A DNA stretch of 64,000 bases, taken from positions 198,651-262,650 of IMG/VR virus record IMGVR_UViG_3300029267_004162. One strand, 5' to 3'. This document shows, piece by piece, positions 7,766-57,678 of the stretch. A program made the position numbers and the translations under genes. Under the pieces are notes generated by a model, which saw nothing but the letters and a program-made list of their open reading frames with translations, was not told where the DNA came from and ran no database searches. How positions within the stretch are numbered: position 1 is the stretch's first letter; each line of letters starts with the position of its first letter.

Positions 7766-9031
7766 GTGGCAAAGAAAGTTACTATCCAAAGTATTCTTCC
7801 ATCAATCTCCAAATGGATGCGCCAGGAGTATAACGTCTTGTTTCGGGGAGACCATGGGGTAGGCAAGACATCCGTGATACTAGAAGCCGCGAGAGAAGTA
7901 GGTTTGCGGCTGAAGTATTACTCCGTTCCCACCATGGACCCCCAAACACAATTCATAGGGATACCCTATCCTGAAGAAGTGCCCGAGGAGCAAATTCTGC
8001 TCGCCTCCGCCATCAAAGCACTGGAGAAGATCAAAACCAAACACACCTCGTTCACACATTTGGCCAAGGCGCTGGGCTTAGTGAAAGGCACCCGTCAATT
8101 GCGGTTCATTCGTCCCCATGATGTGGACGATGCAGAGATTATCTTCTTTGATGAAATCGGGCGTGGTCACCCCCGGATTCTGAACGCCATGTTTGAGTTA
8201 ATCCAGTTCGGCTCTCTGAATGGGGAGAAACTTCCTAACTTGAAGATGATTTGGGCAGCCGGGAACTTTGGTCGAGATTATGACTCGGTTGAATTGGACC
8301 CGGCGTTGGAAGATAGGTTTCATATCCAGATTCAACTAGAAGCCAACCCTGATCGAAAGTGGATGACCGAAGTCGCTGGGATTACCCCAGAAATCTCTCA
8401 GGCTTTGGTTGAATGGTGGCGAACGCTTGCCCCTGATGCTAAACGCCTAGTCTCACCCCGGCGATTGGAATACATAGGTCGGCAGTATATGCAGGGCGTT
8501 CCCCCAGATCAAGCTCTTCCGCCAAATAGAGTACCAGTCGCAGCCCTGGATGAATTGCTGAAACAGATTTCTATCGTCCCGAGGGTCGTTCAGGCGTTAG
8601 CAACTCCAGCGGGATTCGGGGAGTTGCAGGCTGAGTTTCTAGACCAAGTAAAGGCCATGAAGCTTCGTAACCAAATTGAGGCTATGAAACCTAAGGATCG
8701 CAAACCGATTCTGGATGCGCTAGCTGTTTTGCCCAGTGAAGTGCTCTCTGGGATCATCAGGACTAATTCGGAGATCAAAACAGAGGTAGGAGAAAACATC
8801 GCCGATCTGCCTAATCTGCAACAAGCCCTAGACAAAACCGGAGATTTGGCGGGCATCACTAGTTCCATAACTGCCGATTACTCGGGTTTAATCACTGAGC
8901 CTTCCTGGTATTATGTCAGTCCAGGAGAGCGACACGGGGGTAAATTTGGTTGGAAAAACGGGGACACTGTCGTTCGGGATAAAGAAGAATGGAGGGCGAA
9001 CAGTGGCTCCGCAATTGCTAAACCAATTTGA
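7766..9031 (+). CDS. MoxR-like AAA+ ATPase
   Basis: Walker A GDHGVGKT, Walker B IFFDEIGR, WAAGN, LDPALEDRF arginine finger, SPRRLE sensor. Confidence 0.85.
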   Translation: MAKKVTIQSILPSISKWMRQEYNVLFRGDHGVGKTSVILEAAREVGLRLKYYSVPTMDPQTQFIGIPYPEEVPEEQILLASAIKALEKIKTKHTSFTHLAKALGLVKGTRQLRFIRPHDVDDAEIIFFDEIGRGHPRILNAMFELIQFGSLNGEKLPNLKMIWAAGNFGRDYDSVELDPALEDRFHIQIQLEANPDRKWMTEVAGITPEISQALVEWWRTLAPDAKRLVSPRRLEYIGRQYMQGVPPDQALPPNRVPVAALDELLKQISIVPRVVQALATPAGFGELQAEFLDQVKAMKLRNQIEAMKPKDRKPILDALAVLPSEVLSGIIRTNSEIKTEVGENIADLPNLQQALDKTGDLAGITSSITADYSGLITEPSWYYVSPGERHGGKFGWKNGDTVVRDKEEWRANSGSAIAKPI

Positions 9032-10268
9032 GCTGACCGAGAAATGGAATCGCGTAGTCGATATCATTGATTGTTCACACGCACTGGCGTGGTCATCTCA
9101 CCTCTACCGGATAGGGACTCCTTTGTGGACGACGTTAACCGAGACGGCCGCAGTGTCTCACAGTCCCAAACAAGGGCTGCAATTCATCTTTAACCCGCAA
9201 TTCATGTCTGGTCTCACTGATGTTCAGATAGCGTTCGTTGCCCTGCATGAGGCGTGTCACATTATGTTGGGGCATTGCCACAAGGTAAACTGGATTCGAG
9301 ACCACCACAGATGGAACATAGCTTGTGATATCGTGATTAACGAAATGCTGCTTCGCATGCCAACGTTTGGTGACGAGGGCAGGTCGTTGCAATCAGCATC
9401 TTTCAGGCCCCAGCTTTTGGCTAATAATGGTCTACCCCCTGGCGATTATACCGCCGAGCAGGTGTATGGGCTTCTTGGGGAGACCAATTTATCCAAAAAG
9501 AACACGTTGGACGATCACAAGTTCGGGGAAGATTCTGCTGGTGCGATTGGAGAAGCTATCGACAAACTGTTGGAGGATCCAACTTTTCGCAATCAGGTTG
9601 ACGAATTTTTGAGGGCCGGTAACACGTCATTGGGAAACGAGTTTCTTGTTCCTAGCAAGGCGCAGAATCTTGACAAGGAAAAATACCCTGTAGAGCAGTG
9701 GTTCAAGGACGCCGTTAGGACAGTAATGGGGGAAAGAACAAACGAGGTGTGGGGGCCAATGAATCCCAGGATAGCCGCATTTTGGCCGGATACTTATCTA
9801 CCTGTTGAGGCTGTAAGTTCGGGTCTTAAATACAGACTCCGAGTGTACATGGACACCAGTGGATCGATTGTCTCGGCCCGGTACCGGGGTGGGTATGATT
9901 TGTTGGAAAGGTTCAGTTTAGTTTTGGAAACTGTCCCCACCAACCACTTCGAAATGGAAGTATTCACGTTTGACACAGGGTGGAAGGTAGATCGCCCCTC
10001 TATGGGGGTTTATCCGCTTACGAAAGACCGTAACGGAAAATTTGTTTTCCGGGGCGGGGGAGGCACCTGTTTCAAACAATTAGAAAGACACTGCTTGTCT
10101 GGACTTCGTTATCCAGATTGCATAATGGTTTTAACAGATGGTATGGGTTCTCCAGTCGAGGTGAAATACCCAAATCGGTGGGTATGGCTTCTAACCAGAA
10201 AACCGTACCTTCAGTTGCCTGGGAAAGTTATTAATTTGCCTGTGCCTAAGCCGAGGCAGAGGCGATGA
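9003..10268 (+). CDS. VWA-like domain protein with N-terminal metallopeptidase (DUF2201-type)
   Basis: HEACH (HExxH), NIACD..IN, MDTSGS MIDAS, GGGGTCF, LTDG. Start moved to GTG 9003 after GGAGG; ORF track starts at 8913. Confidence 0.85.
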   Translation: MAPQLLNQFELTEKWNRVVDIIDCSHALAWSSHLYRIGTPLWTTLTETAAVSHSPKQGLQFIFNPQFMSGLTDVQIAFVALHEACHIMLGHCHKVNWIRDHHRWNIACDIVINEMLLRMPTFGDEGRSLQSASFRPQLLANNGLPPGDYTAEQVYGLLGETNLSKKNTLDDHKFGEDSAGAIGEAIDKLLEDPTFRNQVDEFLRAGNTSLGNEFLVPSKAQNLDKEKYPVEQWFKDAVRTVMGERTNEVWGPMNPRIAAFWPDTYLPVEAVSSGLKYRLRVYMDTSGSIVSARYRGGYDLLERFSLVLETVPTNHFEMEVFTFDTGWKVDRPSMGVYPLTKDRNGKFVFRGGGGTCFKQLERHCLSGLRYPDCIMVLTDGMGSPVEVKYPNRWVWLLTRKPYLQLPGKVINLPVPKPRQRR

Positions 10269-20478: not shown

Positions 20479-20985
20479 GTGATCACATATTTGGACATGG
20501 ATGGCGTTATCGTTGACTTCAACAAGGGGGTATCGGATAAGTTTGGAGTAGATGTTACGGACGCGGACACCAGGGCTTTACATAAATTGATTGGGGTTAG
20601 TTCCACCCTTTTTTGGAAAACCCTCAATGAATCCAGTACGTGGTGGGCAGAGTTGGAACCCTATCCATGGTTGGAAGAACTAGTGGATTTGATCGAAAAA
20701 CGGGGTTCATGGTATCTTTGTACCGCTGCTGCCTCTCTTGCTGCTCTTCATGGCAGAGTTAGATGGATTAAGAGGATCTTCGGTTCTCAGTTTGATCGGT
20801 TTGTTTTTACTCGGCACAAACATCTGTTAGCTCGACCCCACACATTGCTGATTGATGACACGCCAAAACAGGTAGAGGATTTCAGTAGCGAAGAGGGGGC
20901 TAGAGCTGTGCTTTTTCCTCAGCCCTGGAATCAGGCCACTTATGACATCTCGGAATTTATGGATGTTTTGAGGGTAAGTCAATGA
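20479..20985 (+). CDS. 5'(3')-deoxyribonucleotidase, HAD family
   Basis: LDMDGVIVDF (DxD), KHLL and LLIDD motifs. Confidence 0.88.
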   Translation: MITYLDMDGVIVDFNKGVSDKFGVDVTDADTRALHKLIGVSSTLFWKTLNESSTWWAELEPYPWLEELVDLIEKRGSWYLCTAAASLAALHGRVRWIKRIFGSQFDRFVFTRHKHLLARPHTLLIDDTPKQVEDFSSEEGARAVLFPQPWNQATYDISEFMDVLRVSQ

Positions 20986-22058
20986 GTTCTCATGCGATTG
21001 AAGTCATAACCATTCCTAAGGTGAAAAAACACCCTAACGCGGATACCCTGGGGTTGGTCGATATTTGGGGTTGGTCCTGTTGTATACGGCTGAATGATTT
21101 TAAGGAAGGCGATTTAGCCGTCTATATTCCACCTGACTATATGGTACCTGATATTGAGGCATTTCAGTTCCTAAAGGACTCCAGTAGTGACCGATGGCGT
21201 CGGATTCGGGTACGTCGATTTCGCGGGATTTTGTCGCAGGGTTTAGTATGGTTTGCACCGGAGGGCACCAAAGAGGGTGATGATGTCATGGAACTGATGG
21301 GTATCACCCGCTACGAGCCGCCTCTTCCGACGAGTTTCAACACAGATAATGAAACTGGCCCACATGGTTACTACCCCAAGTATGATGTCGAGAATTACCG
21401 CCGCTATGGCAGCGGTATCTTTGTTGAGGGTGAAGAGATAGTAGTAACCGAGAAGATTCATGGTTGTAACGCTCGGTTTGTTTGTACTCTCCCCAAGTCA
21501 GATAAGACTTGGCCAGATGGTACTCCGATAGGTCCTTGTGACGCTGCCTTCCCCAACGAAAGTGAAACACTAAGGATGTTCTGTGGTAGTCGAACCAATT
21601 GGAAGAAAAAGGACGAAAAGAGTCCCTGGTGGCAAACCCTCCAACAAAATCCGGCTATCGAAACCTGGTGTCGCGCTCATCCTGGACTGGTCCTTTATGC
21701 TGAGGTGTACGGGCAGGTTCAGAGTCTCAAATATGGAGCAAATCGTAATCAGTTCTTTGTAGCAGTTTTTGATATACTTGATCTGGATGGGAATTGGTTA
21801 GAATTTGATGAAGCCTTCACCCTTGTTTCAGAGGTGCCGGGATTGAATTGGGCACCTGTGGTTTATCGGGGTCTCTGTAATGAGGAAGTTCTTGAGCTGG
21901 CGGAGGGGGACAGCCTTATCCCAGGGGCAAACCACCTTAGAGAAGGCGTGGTGGTTCAACCAATTAAAGAGAGACGCGATAATATGTGTGGTCGGGTAAA
22001 GCTCAAAATTGTGAGTAACCAATATCTCGAGGGTAAGAAAAGTCATAGGGGAGCTTAA
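20982..22058 (+). CDS. ATP-dependent RNA ligase (DRB0094/Rnl2-like family)
   Basis: N-terminal HPNADTL...GDLAVYIPPD...RG.LSQG domain; ligase motifs TEKIHG, EVYG, VFD, EGVVV, KLK. Confidence 0.92.
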   Translation: MSSHAIEVITIPKVKKHPNADTLGLVDIWGWSCCIRLNDFKEGDLAVYIPPDYMVPDIEAFQFLKDSSSDRWRRIRVRRFRGILSQGLVWFAPEGTKEGDDVMELMGITRYEPPLPTSFNTDNETGPHGYYPKYDVENYRRYGSGIFVEGEEIVVTEKIHGCNARFVCTLPKSDKTWPDGTPIGPCDAAFPNESETLRMFCGSRTNWKKKDEKSPWWQTLQQNPAIETWCRAHPGLVLYAEVYGQVQSLKYGANRNQFFVAVFDILDLDGNWLEFDEAFTLVSEVPGLNWAPVVYRGLCNEEVLELAEGDSLIPGANHLREGVVVQPIKERRDNMCGRVKLKIVSNQYLEGKKSHRGA

Positions 22059-22199: not shown

Positions 22200-22220
22200 A
22201 ATTCGTTAGGAAGGAATGAT

Positions 22221-22323: not shown

Positions 22324-22396
22324 TTTAATGGAAGGAGTCACTCATTCGTTAGGAGAAGTAATGGGATTGTAGCTCAGTTGGTAGAGCAACGGCCTT

Positions 22397-23008
22397 CAGG
22401 AAAAATAGGAGCCTTCTGTGTGGAAGATCGAGAGGGTTGTCAGTGCCAGTCCTTACAGCTTCGCTGTTGTAAGGAAGCACCCTAGCTTATGCACATGATT
22501 ACGTGCCTATGCACAGGGTCGTCATGGAGAACATGATCGGTAGACTTCTCGATTCCGATGAAGTGGTTCATCAAGAACGGGAACAGGAAGGATAATCGAC
22601 CTAAGAATCTGGAACTCCTGTCTAACGCCGAACACGCTAGGAGACATGGATTTGACCAGAAACAAAAGTGGTGCGATTTCGTCTGTCCTATTGTGGTGAA
22701 TCGTTCTCAAGAAAACACAATCGAACTCACCTAGGGAAGGGGAGGGGAGATTGTACCTGCTGTAGCAGGTCTTGTGGAACCTCTTTCGCTAGAAAGAGAA
22801 ATCTTCAAAGTGCAACTGCAGAAGTGGAGAGTGCCATATCGGGGAACGTCGTAAGAGTGTACAAGAAGTATGCTCACGATAATCCCGAGGAAACCGTCTG
22901 ACGCGGGATCCGTAGAGGCCATACGCACTCAGCCTGAGATGGTTAAGAGATGGTCCAGCCGACAAGCCAGCCCTAGTGTTGGTGGTTATGGAAACATGAT
23001 GTCGGATG
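22397..23008 (+). mobile_element. group I intron (612 nt) in the tRNA anticodon, with a degenerate HNH ORF
   Basis: 5' exon ends in U and can pair with GGAGCC (22408-22413); terminal G at 23008; core-like ATATCGGGGAAC / AATCCCGAGG (P4), GTAGAGGCCATAC and AAGAGATGGTCC (P7 GGCCAT/ATGGTC). Confidence 0.82.
22418..22901 (+). pseudogene. frameshifted HNH homing endonuclease inside the intron
   Basis: Three frame changes (near 22484, 22572, 22689) join MWKIERVV...RKHP / YVPMHRVVMENMIGRLLDSDEVVH / KNGNRKDNRPKNLELLSNAEHARRH / CGESF...CCSRSC. Confidence 0.85.
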
Positions 23009-23060
23009 TTAAGCCGTGAGTCGTGGGTTCGAGCCCCACCAGTCCCAATTATAAATCTTC

Positions 23061-23133
23061 AGGACCGTAGCTCAGTGTGCAGAGCACCGCCCTCTTAAGG
23101 CGGGGGTCGCAGGTTCAAATCCTGCCGGTCCTA
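23061..23133 (+). tRNA. tRNA-Lys(CUU)
   Basis: AGGACCG/CGGTCCT, GCTC/GAGC, CCGCC-CTCTTAA-GGCGG, GCAGG-TTCAAAT-CCTGC; D-loop lacks the GG; no encoded CCA. Confidence 0.93.
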
Positions 23134-24690
23134 TTTGGGGTCATACGTCTTCTGGGGAATGTCATCCTGCGGTCTTGTCAAAATTGTAATGCCTCATTTG
23201 ATATTTCTGAAGCCGAGGTGGCTCGGGGGAGGGGGAAGTATTGTTCTCAAGCGTGTTATAAAGAGTCCTTCTTAGAGGAGAGGCTTTGTCAATGTGGAAC
23301 AAAGTTTAAAACCAAAAAGGGGAAACGGGGTCGTAAAACTTGTTCTAATCGGTGTGCAAAATCCAGAGTATTGAGCGAAGAAACTCGCGATAAAATTAGC
23401 AACACCTTATCTCGAGGAGAGCATCAGAAGAAGAGGGGGAAATACACCAAAAAATGTCACCGCTGTAAAACCTTATTCGAAACATACTCTTCTAAGAGCC
23501 GTCTTTGTGGGAGTTGTAAGCAATCTAAAAAATGCAAGGTCTGCAACCGGGATTTGGTCCAAAAAGAGTGCGTGTGGTGTAAAAAAGCAGTTAGCCAAAA
23601 GCCCTTACCTAAGCGGTGCCGCAATAAACGAGGGGCCAAGCTGTTGGTAGAAATCTTGAATCTAACTCAGGACAATAACCAACAGCTCTGTGAAGACTTG
23701 GGCGTGGATTTCGTAGTGGGGAAATTGGCTATTGAATACCAGAACCCAAAGTATCCCTATTCCACAGACAACGACCACGAGGATCAGTTGATGTCGCGGG
23801 GGTTTGTTCCTCATCCGATTAGTTGGAGTTTGGAGGGGGAACCTGATTCGAAAGAGCGTTTGCGGCTGGAAGCCGATATCATTGATTTTTGTGCGGCCAA
23901 CGATAATCCGTTTGTATTCACATACGACAAAATCGCTTTTCAAGACCAATACGCCCGTTTACAAAAGACTACTTCCCTTAAAGGCTTCTGCTATTGTAGA
24001 ACGGCCATGGAGTGGTACCACAAACATCTGTGGACAATGAAGACGTCCAGAGCCGAAGTTGATCCCATATCCTATTGGCGGTGCAACCCGGCGAAAATAA
24101 CCGCCAATAGAATAAAATACGCCAATTTGTCTCCAACTTCCCTACGTCGCTATTTTAAGCTTTTTGACATGGTTCCAACCATGTTCCAGGATTCATTAGG
24201 TAAGCGAATGGCCCTCATGGTTGACGGGCCGGAGATAGTGGACCCCTTTGCTGGTTTTGGTGGTCGAATGTTGGGGGCTTGTGCTATTGGGAAGACATAC
24301 ACTGGATTCGACATCAACCCCTGGACTTGTAGTGCTAACGTTATCATGGCTAAGGAAATGGGGCTAACCGGCGTACGTATTCATCACGCTGATTCTTCTC
24401 AGATGGATCCCGTTGAATGTGACGGAGTAATTACTAGTCCGCCTTTCTTCAACAAGGACGAATACGGGGATGGGGGCTATGATTCGCTTGAGCAATATCA
24501 ACGCGCGATTCATGAGACGTTCAAGCGAATCACTCTCCGGGACAAGGCCATCTTGGATTTCAAGCCGGTTCAGGGGTGTTCTTTAGATGATTTTGTCGCG
24601 GCCCTGCCGTATCGGGTCCAGAAGATAGAAGAAGTGAATTTCGGGGGGTTGGGCCGTAAATCTATACACCACTGGGTGGTGGCCTGCTAG
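23077..24690 (+). CDS. multidomain protein: Cys-rich Zn-finger repeats, NUMOD3-like motif, putative PD-(D/E)XK nuclease and amino-methyltransferase
   Basis: CxxC..F..CSxxC repeats; LSEETRDKISNTL; DFVVGKLAIEYQ; VDPFAGFGGRMLGA, FDINP, ITSPPFFNKDEY. The track start overlaps the tRNA, so the real start must be after 23133. Confidence 0.75.
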   Translation: MQSTALLRRGSQVQILPVLFGVIRLLGNVILRSCQNCNASFDISEAEVARGRGKYCSQACYKESFLEERLCQCGTKFKTKKGKRGRKTCSNRCAKSRVLSEETRDKISNTLSRGEHQKKRGKYTKKCHRCKTLFETYSSKSRLCGSCKQSKKCKVCNRDLVQKECVWCKKAVSQKPLPKRCRNKRGAKLLVEILNLTQDNNQQLCEDLGVDFVVGKLAIEYQNPKYPYSTDNDHEDQLMSRGFVPHPISWSLEGEPDSKERLRLEADIIDFCAANDNPFVFTYDKIAFQDQYARLQKTTSLKGFCYCRTAMEWYHKHLWTMKTSRAEVDPISYWRCNPAKITANRIKYANLSPTSLRRYFKLFDMVPTMFQDSLGKRMALMVDGPEIVDPFAGFGGRMLGACAIGKTYTGFDINPWTCSANVIMAKEMGLTGVRIHHADSSQMDPVECDGVITSPPFFNKDEYGDGGYDSLEQYQRAIHETFKRITLRDKAILDFKPVQGCSLDDFVAALPYRVQKIEEVNFGGLGRKSIHHWVVAC

Positions 24691-57606: not shown

Positions 57607-57678
57607 AGCCCCGTAGTTCAGTGGCAGAACGCAAGGCTTTGATCCTTGAAGTCGCAGGTTCGAATCCTGCCGGGGCTT
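57607..57678 (+). tRNA. tRNA-Gln(UUG)
   Basis: AGCCCCG/CGGGGCT, GTTC/GAAC, CAAGG-CTTTGAT-CCTTG, GCAGG-TTCGAAT-CCTGC. Confidence 0.93.

What the first reader, a model, noticed from the sequence alone, without database searches (positions are those of the whole stretch)
22363..23047. Phage tRNA-Lys(UUU) split inside its anticodon by a group I intron
Seen: the 5' half (22363-22396, ending ...ACGGC-CTT) and 3' half (23009-23047, TTAA-GCCGT...) rebuild a complete Lys(UUU) cloverleaf when 612 nt are removed. The insert has a U.G splice-site pairing with GGAGCC, P4- and P7-like core elements and a terminal G, placing it after the wobble base (34/35). Known: bacterial tRNA group I introns are described mainly for Leu, fMet, Arg and a few others, and phage group I introns mostly sit in protein genes. 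tRNA-Lys(UUU) is a target of host anticodon nucleases (PrrC, PARIS AriB). Inference: this is a rare intron site in a phage tRNA. The precursor lacks an intact anticodon loop until spliced, which could time the supply of, or shield, a replacement tRNA-Lys.
Basis: partly seen in the sequence, partly recalled or inferred. Interest (0 to 1): 0.8.

Follow-up and report, generated by a model that had tools for sequence, protein, structure and literature searches.

The report
Self-splicing intron inside phage tRNA-Lys
A lysine tRNA gene of a 262-kb phage is split in its anticodon by a group I (self-splicing type) intron that carries a broken homing-endonuclease gene; it belongs to a large intron family that normally sits in bacterial and phage tRNA-Arg genes, and matters mainly because introns in phage tRNA genes were thought not to occur.

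Summary
Bases 22363-22396 and 23009-23047 are the two halves of one tRNA, and removing the 612 nt between them gives a perfect cloverleaf.

The insert is a group I intron of the bacterial tRNA (IC3-like) kind.
- A covariance model built from 43 relatives, without the window, matches 22826-23013 at 160 bits (E = 3e-48).
- Helices P3, P4, P5, P6, P8 and P9 are supported by compensatory changes: 97% of cells are paired and 25 pairs changed on both sides.
- The terminal G (23008) is invariant in the family alignment.
- Rfam's own model misses the window. It finds an ORF-less relative only below its cut-off (39.6 bits, E = 8e-9).

- About 480 nt of the insert is an HNH homing-endonuclease gene in the P2 loop, broken by three frameshifts.
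- Nearly all of roughly 190 relatives sit at the same position in tRNA-Arg(UCU). The Lys site is therefore most likely a secondary jump to a look-alike target.
- ARAGORN calls the gene Asn(GUU). The invariant terminal G and the tRNA body argue for Lys(UUU).

Lys at 34/35 is already catalogued in bacteria in a 2020 preprint. I found no report for phage tRNA genes. The "timing or shielding" idea has no support. Splicing itself is untested.

The parts
22363..22396 (+). 5' exon: tRNA positions 1-34 (acceptor GGGAUUG, D arm, anticodon stem ACGGC, then C32 U33 U34)
   Evidence: The body lacks the A20 (GGAUA D loop) that all Arg(UCU) hosts of this intron family carry. With the anticodon masked, its closest tRNAs are Lys.
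22397..23008 (+). Group I intron, 612 nt, IC3-like
   Evidence: Its relative L006 is hit full length by RF00028, E = 8e-9.
22394..22411 (+). P1: C22394-U22396 plus C22397 paired with G22408-G22411. U22396.G22409 is the wobble pair at the 5' splice site. The loop is 22398-22407.
   Evidence: Read from the sequence. CUU|Y with GGAG is kept across 44 family members. The register is the same as in the curated Arg.3Ug and Lys.3Ug rows of the Williams alignment.
22413..22420 (+). P2 5' strand (CUUCUGUG); it contains the GUG start codon (22418-22420) of the endonuclease ORF
   Evidence: Pairs with 22817-22824. The partner strands change together in relatives: GUUCUAUG/CAUAGAAC, GUUUCGUG/CACGGAAC, CCUCUUGUG/CACAAGAGG.
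22418..22901 (+). HNH homing-endonuclease pseudogene in the P2 loop, readable in three frames (22418-22498, 22503-22595, 22558-22734, 22668-22901)
   Evidence: Pfam HNH_3 27.9 bits against a cut-off of 24.8, plus PHROG HNH families. The pieces align in order to the intact 156-aa ORF of L048. Deletions of 2, 2 and 1 nt lie after 22489, 22575 and 22689.
22817..22824 (+). P2 3' strand (UGCAGAAG)
22826..23008 (+). Catalytic core: P3 22829-34/22925-30; P4 22839-44/22883-88; P5 22849-52/22876-79; P6 22889-91/22909-11; P6a 22894-96/22904-06; P8 22931-34/22941-44; P9.0 22959-63/23001-05; P9a 22966-71/22978-83; P9b 22986-90/22995-99 with a GAAA loop
   Evidence: All 42 modelled pairs are standard pairs in the window.
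22915..22956 (+). P7 pseudoknot: G22915, bulged A22916 and G22917-A22921, paired with U22951-C22956. It is preceded by J8/7 AAGAGA (22945-22950).
   Evidence: Read from the sequence. It is invariant in my set because the set was collected with this motif. It matches the GAGACUA...UAGUCC of classical IC3 rows, with U-A replaced by C-G.
23008..23008 (+). Terminal G of the intron (omega G), which defines the 3' splice site
   Evidence: An invariant column in 45 of 45 aligned family members
23009..23047 (+). 3' exon: tRNA positions 35-73 (U35 U36 A37 A38, stem GCCGU, T arm, acceptor CAGUCCC, discriminator A)
   Evidence: The first exon base is U here and in L021, and C in the 43 other rows.

Best explanation
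The locus is a tRNA-Lys(UUU) gene of a jumbo phage, interrupted between U34 and U35 by a group I intron of the IC3-like family that lives in bacterial and phage tRNA genes.

Inferred mechanism, from the known chemistry of the class:
- The precursor folds into P1-P9, and the anticodon stem ACGGC/GCCGU holds the two exons together.
- Free guanosine attacks after U22396, which sits in a U.G wobble pair with G22409.
- G23008 then takes the guanosine site, and the exons are joined to give the loop CUUUUAA.

The intron once moved as DNA by means of an HNH homing endonuclease encoded in its P2 loop. The ribosome-binding AGGAG of that gene is the internal guide sequence, and its start codon lies inside the P2 stem. 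The gene is now dead, with three frameshifts, while the ribozyme core is fully intact. That is the pattern expected when selection keeps splicing, and hence the tRNA, but no longer keeps mobility.

The intron's relatives sit almost exclusively in tRNA-Arg(UCU). The anticodon arm of the window tRNA (AACGGCCTT^TTAAGCCGTG) differs from that of some Arg(UCU) hosts only at position 35. The presence in tRNA-Lys is therefore best explained by ectopic homing into a look-alike target.

Shown: anatomy, family membership, covariation, decay of the ORF. Inferred: that the intron still splices, the direction of the jump, and that the product is charged with lysine.
For: - The split cloverleaf is real.
- The covariance model built without the window scores 159.9 bits, E = 2.8e-48. 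This lies in the upper part of the 20-170 bit range of 40 non-seed matches.
- Covariation: 97.1% of cells are paired and 25 pairs have changes on both sides. The score is 0.512 against 0.166 in shuffles (0 of 500 reach it) and at most 0.075 when the partners are slid.
- The terminal G is invariant in 45 of 45 rows. All 42 modelled pairs are standard pairs in the window.
- RF00028 matches the ORF-less relative L006 over its full length, 39.6 bits, E = 8e-9.
- The HNH pieces match an intact homologue in order, and the frameshifts are mapped. Identity to L048 is 78% in the core and 55% in the ORF.
- Census: of 189 interrupted tRNAs carrying the motif, nearly all are Arg(UCU) with the junction CCUU|..G|CUAAG. 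Only the window phage gives TTAAG.
- In the tree, the window falls in a clade (support 89/96) of viral and metagenome introns, all in Arg(UCU) where the host gene is visible.
- L149 and L031 have the same anticodon arm as the window apart from C35.
- Lys identity: the body is nearest to Lys tRNAs, the discriminator is A73, there is no A20, and tRNA-Lys(CUU) lies 13 nt downstream. An unrelated phage array has Lys(UUU) with the identical anticodon arm followed by Lys(CUU).
Against: - There is no RNA evidence. No RNA run could be listed, so splicing is not shown.
- RF00028 does not hit the window at any threshold. None of 12 loci with relatives reaches its curated cut-off.
- P1 has only 4 bp, and I see no P10.
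- P7 could not show covariation, because my set was collected with the P7 motif.
- ARAGORN places the junction one base to the left and calls the gene Asn(GUU).
- The direction Arg to Lys rests on numbers and on tree position. I did no rooted test.
- The set of relatives is biased by the exact pattern used to find them.
Confidence: 0.78

Rival explanations
1. The gene is tRNA-Asn(GUU). On this reading the intron is 22396-23007, the 5' exon ends in CCU, and the 3' exon begins with GUUAA. This is how ARAGORN draws it.
For: ARAGORN in intron mode reports tRNA-Asn(gtt) with the intron at 'ggcct-Intron-gttaa'. The cloverleaf is equally perfect.
Against: - The intron would end in U. The G at 23008 lies in a column that is G in 45 of 45 family members and directly precedes the exon in the Arg(UCU) hosts. 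There, moving it into the exon would give an impossible Ser(GCU) with a short variable arm and an Arg-type D loop.
- The discriminator is A. By general knowledge, bacterial Asn tRNAs carry G73.
- With the anticodon masked, the best Asn match scores 19 against 43.5 for Lys, although only 2 Asn genes were in the sample.
- Full-length matches of both halves in annotated phage records are mostly tRNA-Lys and none is Asn.
Confidence: 0.05
2. The locus is dead. The intron can no longer splice, or the tRNA is no longer used, so this is a disrupted tRNA pseudogene decaying together with its endonuclease gene.
For: The endonuclease ORF has three frameshifts. There is no RNA evidence. P1 is short. In the related loci L008 and L010 the flanking tRNA halves no longer give a cloverleaf.
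Against: - The ribozyme core shows no decay. All modelled pairs are standard pairs and every invariant base is kept.
- Its model score is above the median of non-seed members.
- Both exon halves still form a flawless cloverleaf.
- The ORF has diverged much more than the core, 55% against 78% identity to L048.
- The sequence is identical in contigs from four samples.
Confidence: 0.12
3. The intron has been put to use. Keeping the anticodon loop split until splicing delays or protects the supply of a phage tRNA-Lys(UUU) that replaces host tRNA-Lys cut by anticodon nucleases such as PrrC or PARIS AriB.
For: Context only. An RNA ligase gene (20982-22058, PF09414 plus an OB fold) lies 305 nt upstream, and a second Lys tRNA (CUU) lies 13 nt downstream. 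By general knowledge, tRNA-Lys(UUU) is a target of such nucleases.
Against: - The spliced product has the ordinary loop CUUUUAA and would be as cleavable as the host tRNA.
- The same intron family sits in Arg(UCU), Leu(UAA) and Glu(UUC) genes of many bacteria and phages, so its presence needs no Lys-specific reason.
- The decayed endonuclease gene fits the usual life cycle of a selfish intron.
- Nothing in the sequence points to regulated splicing.
Confidence: 0.07

Closest known systems
[quoted passage not shown]
   Same: The same ribozyme lineage: one covariance model covers both, and the P7 motif GAGGCCA...UGGUCC, J8/7, P9.0 and the terminal G lie in register. The insertion point is the same, after U34, with the same guide pairing CUU|Y with GGAG.
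   Different: The host gene here is a Lys-type tRNA (U35, no A20, a different acceptor stem). The genome is a phage. This copy carries a decayed HNH gene.
'Lys.3Ug' class of bacterial tRNA-Lys introns (seed row Mle24.Lys.3Ug in the same preprint)
   Same: The same tRNA isotype, the same position (CUU/...g/UUAA), and the same kind of ribozyme.
   Different: A different intron lineage, judged from the seed row. Its P4 is UGCUGG/UCAGCA and its P7 is CAGAGACUA...UAGUCC, against UCGGGG/UCCCGA and GUAGAGGCCA...UGGUCC here. That points to an independent insertion. The known class is bacterial, not phage.
Cyanobacterial and plastid tRNA-Leu(UAA) intron, and the Azoarcus tRNA-Ile intron (subgroup IC3)
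   Same: The position is 34/35 (for Leu). The core is compact, with P2, P5, P6, P8 and P9 hairpins and GNRA loops, and no P5abc. By established knowledge of the Anabaena intron, the exons are held by the anticodon stem rather than by P10. Model R1 hits Leu(UAA) introns in my loci over their full length at 50-95 bits.
   Different: Those introns have no ORF. Their P7 is GACUA/UAGUC. They sit in cellular genomes.
Phage group I introns with homing endonucleases (T4 td/I-TevI, SPO1 I-HmuI, Twort I-TwoI)
   Same: A self-splicing intron combined with a homing endonuclease in a peripheral loop of a phage genome. The HNH type is shared with I-HmuI and I-TwoI. This comparison rests on general knowledge.
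   Different: Those are IA-type introns in protein-coding genes. The 2014 review states that all phage introns known then were in protein genes. Here the host gene is a tRNA and the ribozyme is of the bacterial tRNA type.

Membership tests
Group I intron | The 5' exon ends in U, and that U forms a U.G wobble pair with the internal guide sequence (P1) | tested here: met
   U22396.G22409 lies within the 4-bp pairing CUUC/GGAG. CUU|Y with GGAG is kept in 44 family members. The register matches the curated rows.
Group I intron | The intron ends in G (omega G) | tested here: met
   G23008 lies in a column that is invariant in 45 of 45 rows.
Group I intron | A conserved core of P3-P4-P5-P6 and P7-P3'-P8-P7', with P3 and P7 forming a pseudoknot, supported by covariation | tested here: met
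   P3 has 5 of 6 pairs changed on both sides; P4 2 of 6; P6/P6a 5 of 6; P8 3 of 4; P9.0 3 of 5; P9 5 of 5. Overall 97.1% of cells are paired, no shuffle (0 of 500) reaches the observed score, and the slid controls reach at most 0.075. P7 itself is invariant in my set by construction.
Group I intron | A guanosine-binding P7 with a bulged A, and an A-rich J8/7 | tested here: met
   G(A)GGCCA at 22915-22921 pairs with UGGUCC at 22951-22956, and J8/7 is AAGAGA. This is read from sequence only and compared with classical IC3 rows.
Group I intron | A match to Rfam RF00028 at its gathering score (50 bits) | tested here: not met
   There is no hit on the window at the gathering score or at E up to 10, even when the core is given alone. 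The relative L006 scores 39.6 bits, E = 8e-9. None of 12 loci with relatives reaches the gathering score. The Williams preprint notes that the model has no bacterial seed sequences.
Group I intron | Self-splicing with guanosine and Mg2+ | not testable with these tools
   No RNA run could be listed. Only DNA runs hold the locus.
tRNA-Lys(UUU) | A canonical cloverleaf with anticodon UUU after removal of the intron | tested here: met
   ARAGORN calls the spliced sequence tRNA-Lys(ttt). This depends on the splice sites, which are set by U-1 and omega G.
tRNA-Lys(UUU) | A Lys-type body and discriminator A73; charging by LysRS | tested here: inconclusive
   A73 is present. The nearest bodies are Lys, but some close matches are Ala or Ile tRNAs. 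Charging is not testable here.
Intron-encoded HNH homing endonuclease | An HNH domain | tested here: met
   PF13392 HNH_3 scores 27.9 bits against a cut-off of 24.8 on the piece 22558-22731. PHROG HNH families match on three pieces.
Intron-encoded HNH homing endonuclease | An intact open reading frame | tested here: not met
   There are three frameshifting deletions relative to the intact 156-aa ORF of L048, and the second falls inside the HH motif.

The most novel reading that the evidence does not exclude
The window phage and at least five other large viral contigs (L006, L008, L010, L012, L013) carry a clade of IC3-type group I introns, many with an HNH gene in P2, that circulates among tRNA genes of big phages. 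This clade has switched host tRNA: Arg(UCU) to Lys(UUU) here, and Glu(UUC) in L013. That would be the first documented group I introns in phage tRNA genes. It would contradict the textbook statement that phage introns sit only in protein-coding genes.
Probability: 0.55. Interest if true: 0.55.

Novelty: new member of a known kind. Interest (0 to 1): 0.5.

Why it matters
[quoted passage not shown] A 2014 review singled out their absence from phage tRNA genes as a puzzle.

This locus and its relatives show that such introns do occur in the tRNA arrays of large phages. They belong to the same lineage as introns in bacterial tRNA-Arg(UCU). A homing-endonuclease-bearing intron can also move to a different isoacceptor whose anticodon arm looks alike.

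There is a practical point too. Standard annotation (ARAGORN by default, Rfam at its cut-off) misses the gene altogether. With intron search switched on, ARAGORN names the wrong amino acid. Counts of phage tRNAs are therefore likely to be too low, and sometimes wrong.

None of this changes how group I introns are thought to work.

Tried and rejected
- **Hand-folding the 5' part.** I first tried to fold 22420-22520 by hand as P2-P6. This was wrong: the intact homologue in L008 showed that the stretch is the N-terminus of the HNH ORF.
- **Rfam RF00028 on the window.** No hit at the gathering score, none at E up to 10 on 851 nt, and none on the 206-nt core alone.
- **Phage GenBank records.** No near match. 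Distant matches were only ordinary tRNAs. The best hits to the two halves in Vibrio phages proved to be uninterrupted Ala and Ile tRNAs.
- **RNA runs.** None could be listed. The one read-laying run on four DNA runs showed the locus unchanged and relatives of the 3' core. It also showed exact 22396/23009 joints that are probably other organisms' tRNA-Lys genes, since they have 28-nt sides at 80% likeness.
- **Chance hits of the DNA patterns:** L007, L009, L011, L014, L016, L259.
- **A second Lys case.** L021 has a 3' exon beginning TTAAT, but its 5' exon lies outside the stored DNA. Two further viral scans found nothing more.
- **The 11-mer ATTCGTTAGGA**, repeated at 22201 and 22344, is no more frequent than chance in the window. 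The 140 nt between the two copies fold no better than shuffles, z = -0.5. The promoter and terminator scan showed nothing above background.

Full report
**The observation**

- Bases 22363-22396 are GGGATTG-TA-GCTC-AGTTGGTA-GAGC-A-ACGGC-CTT.
- Bases 23009-23047 are TTAA-GCCGT-GAGTC-GTGGG-TTCGAGC-CCCAC-CAGTCCC-A.
- Between them lie 612 nt that begin with C and end with G.

ARAGORN in its default mode and Rfam at its curated (gathering) cut-off see only tRNA-Lys(CUU) at 23061-23133 and tRNA-Gln at 57607-57678. With intron search switched on in a script, ARAGORN finds the split gene. The joined halves give a flawless cloverleaf.

**The genome**

The stretch is identical in two IMG/VR viral contigs of 262 kb and 93 kb, and in a 262-kb JGI contig. 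It lies in a replication module:
- UvrD-type helicase;
- family A DNA polymerase with a UDG-like N-terminus;
- processivity factor;
- UvsX-like recombinase;
- RNA ligase.

Four DNA runs from sediment and seawater hold it unchanged.

**What the insert is made of**

Rfam's group I model gave nothing on the window, even at E up to 10. My first hand-fold of the 5' part was wrong.

The key came from relatives, found by scanning collections for exact motifs of the 3' part.
- In L008 the same element carries an intact ORF. It reads MWKIEKII...HHKNGDRFDNRIENLE...CPNCKKLF...CSKSCGTSF and starts about 20 nt after the junction.
- The window has the same ORF from GTG 22418, but in pieces. Pfam HNH_3 and PHROG HNH families match three frames. 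The pieces align in order to the intact 156-aa ORF of L048.
- Against L048 the window lacks 2 nt after 22489, 2 nt after 22575 (inside the HH motif) and 1 nt after 22689.
- In L006 the ORF is absent, and a 270-nt intron remains in a tRNA-Arg(UCU) gene. There RF00028 matches from end to end at 39.6 bits, E = 8e-9, below its cut-off of 50.

**Structure**

I aligned the stretch from P3 to five bases past the 3' splice site for the window and 44 non-identical relatives (A1). On a structure with P3, P4, P5, P6/P6a, the P7 pseudoknot, P8, P9.0 and P9:
- 97.1% of cells are standard pairs;
- 25 pairs show changes on both sides;
- the covariation score is 0.512, against 0.166 in shuffles (0 of 500 reach it) and at most 0.075 when the partners are slid.

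P7 cannot vary in this set, because the set was collected with the P7 motif. It does match the classical GAGACUA...UAGUCC, with one U-A replaced by C-G.

A covariance model built from 43 relatives without the window (A3, R1) hits 22826-23013 at 159.9 bits, E = 2.8e-48. That is the only hit in the 64 kb. The score lies in the upper part of the range seen for 40 non-seed matches. All 42 modelled pairs are standard pairs in the window.

P1 is CUU|C paired with GGAG, with U22396.G22409 at the splice site. The curated Arg.3Ug and Lys.3Ug rows of the Williams alignment use the same register.

P2 (22413-20 with 22817-24) closes around the ORF. Its two strands change together in relatives. The AGGAG of the guide sequence doubles as the Shine-Dalgarno sequence of the ORF, and the start codon lies in the P2 stem. 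The last 25 or so codons overlap P2' to P6.

I see no P10. The anticodon stem presumably holds the exons together, as is established for the Anabaena tRNA-Leu intron.

**Lys or Asn**

ARAGORN slides the junction one base and calls Asn(GUU), with an intron that ends in U. Four points argue against this.
- The G at 23008 sits in a column that is G in all 45 rows. In the Arg hosts it must belong to the intron, because otherwise they would read Ser(GCU) despite an Arg-type D loop and a short variable arm.
- The discriminator is A.
- With the anticodon masked, the nearest tRNAs in my sample are Lys. Full-length matches of both halves in annotated phage records are mostly Lys and never Asn.
- The next gene is Lys(CUU). 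An unrelated phage array has Lys(UUU) with the identical anticodon arm, followed by Lys(CUU).

I take Lys(UUU) as about 90% likely.

**Where the intron came from**

The motif GTAGAGGCCATACG...TGGTCC hit at least 120 metagenome contigs and at least 120 bacterial genome contigs. The genomes include Acidobacteriota, Chloroflexota, Bacteroidota, giant sulfur bacteria and others.

Among 189 interrupted tRNAs that hold the motif, nearly all are Arg(UCU) with the junction CCUU|...G|CUAAG. A few are Leu(UAA), and one viral contig has Glu(UUC). Only the window phage gives TTAAG.

The Arg hosts all carry GGAUA (A20) in the D loop. The window tRNA does not. It is therefore a different tRNA, not an Arg gene with a mutated anticodon.

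In a maximum-likelihood tree of the core, the window falls in a clade of viral and metagenome sequences (support 89/96). These sit in Arg(UCU) wherever the host gene is visible.

The anticodon arm of the window tRNA equals that of the Arg(UCU) genes in L149 and L031 except at position 35. The simplest account is that an HNH-driven intron of tRNA-Arg(UCU) homed into a look-alike site in tRNA-Lys(UUU). After that the endonuclease gene decayed while the ribozyme was kept: identity to L048 is 78% in the core and 55% in the ORF.

**Comparison with the literature**

[quoted passage not shown] Its seed alignment includes Arg.3Ug, Lys.3Ug and Lys.4Ug. Lys at 34/35 is therefore not new in bacteria.
- The Lys.3Ug seed has different P4 and P7 sequences from the window intron, which suggests a separate lineage.
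- Six searches of the paper library found no report of a group I intron in a phage tRNA gene. This is absence in that library, not proof.

**Function**

Nothing supports the idea that the intron times or shields the tRNA.
- The spliced loop is the ordinary CUUUUAA.
- The family lives in several tRNA types in many organisms.
- The dead endonuclease gene fits the usual cycle of a selfish intron.

The neighbourhood is still worth noting: an RNA ligase 305 nt upstream and two Lys tRNAs side by side.

**Verdict**

It is a new member of a known kind. It is of moderate interest as an example, apparently unreported, of group I introns in phage tRNA genes, and as a case of host-tRNA switching. Splicing itself remains to be shown.

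Noticed in passing
window 20982-22058 (+), with 23061-23133 (+): An RNA ligase gene (N-terminal PHA02142 OB fold plus PF09414; PHROG 'RNA ligase') ends 305 nt upstream of the split tRNA-Lys(UUU). An intact tRNA-Lys(CUU) follows 13 nt downstream. A ligase next to two Lys tRNAs recalls the T4 repair of PrrC-cut tRNA-Lys. No kinase/phosphatase partner was looked for beyond the NT5C-like ORF at 20479-20985.
   Followed up: partly
L008 950-2150 (-) and the identical L010: The same intron with an intact HNH ORF lies in 217-kb and 111-kb viral contigs. The flanking 'exons' do not give a cloverleaf with ARAGORN intron search. An upstream HTH-like ORF reads in frame through the 5' half into the HNH ORF. 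This may be a decayed host tRNA or an intron copied to a new place together with exon flanks.
   Followed up: partly
L035 10895-11357 (-), also L088: Two neighbouring tRNA genes each hold a 194-195-nt ORF-less intron of the same subfamily. ARAGORN reads Thr(CGU) and Thr(UGU) with introns ending in U. The terminal-G register would give anticodons CUU and UUU with the intron at 35/36. The second gene has a long variable arm.
   Followed up: partly
L021 1-400 (+): This is the only other family member whose 3' exon starts with TTAA (U35). Its 3' half looks like the Arg hosts. The 5' exon lies beyond the stored DNA, so the isotype is open.
   Followed up: partly
L013 (+), about 400-700: A 64-kb viral contig has an ORF-less intron of the same family in a tRNA-Glu(UUC) gene. 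It is spliced after U35 (GGUUUU|C...G|CAUCC), with a clean 6-bp P1 GGUUUU/GGAACC.
   Followed up: partly
window 23137-24690 (+): A large ORF lies directly after tRNA-Lys(CUU). It has several CxxC...CSxxC zinc-ribbon repeats like the C-terminal half of the intron's HNH protein (weak PHROG 1271 match). It also has a C-terminal methyltransferase-like part with an SPPF motif (weak PF01555 match).
   Followed up: no
window 22396/23009 joint in DNA runs X1, X2, X4: Contigs from the same samples join 22396 to 23009 exactly (depth about 4.6, 28-nt sides, 80% likeness). These are uninterrupted tRNA genes reading CTT|TTAA. They are probably other organisms' tRNA-Lys(UUU), but an intron-less allele cannot be excluded. 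Other contigs carry the intron's 3' core at about 87% identity.
   Followed up: partly
window 8913-10268 (+): A free-standing 451-aa ORF matches a PHROG HNH endonuclease family (E = 6e-31). The phage therefore carries further homing-endonuclease-like genes.
   Followed up: no
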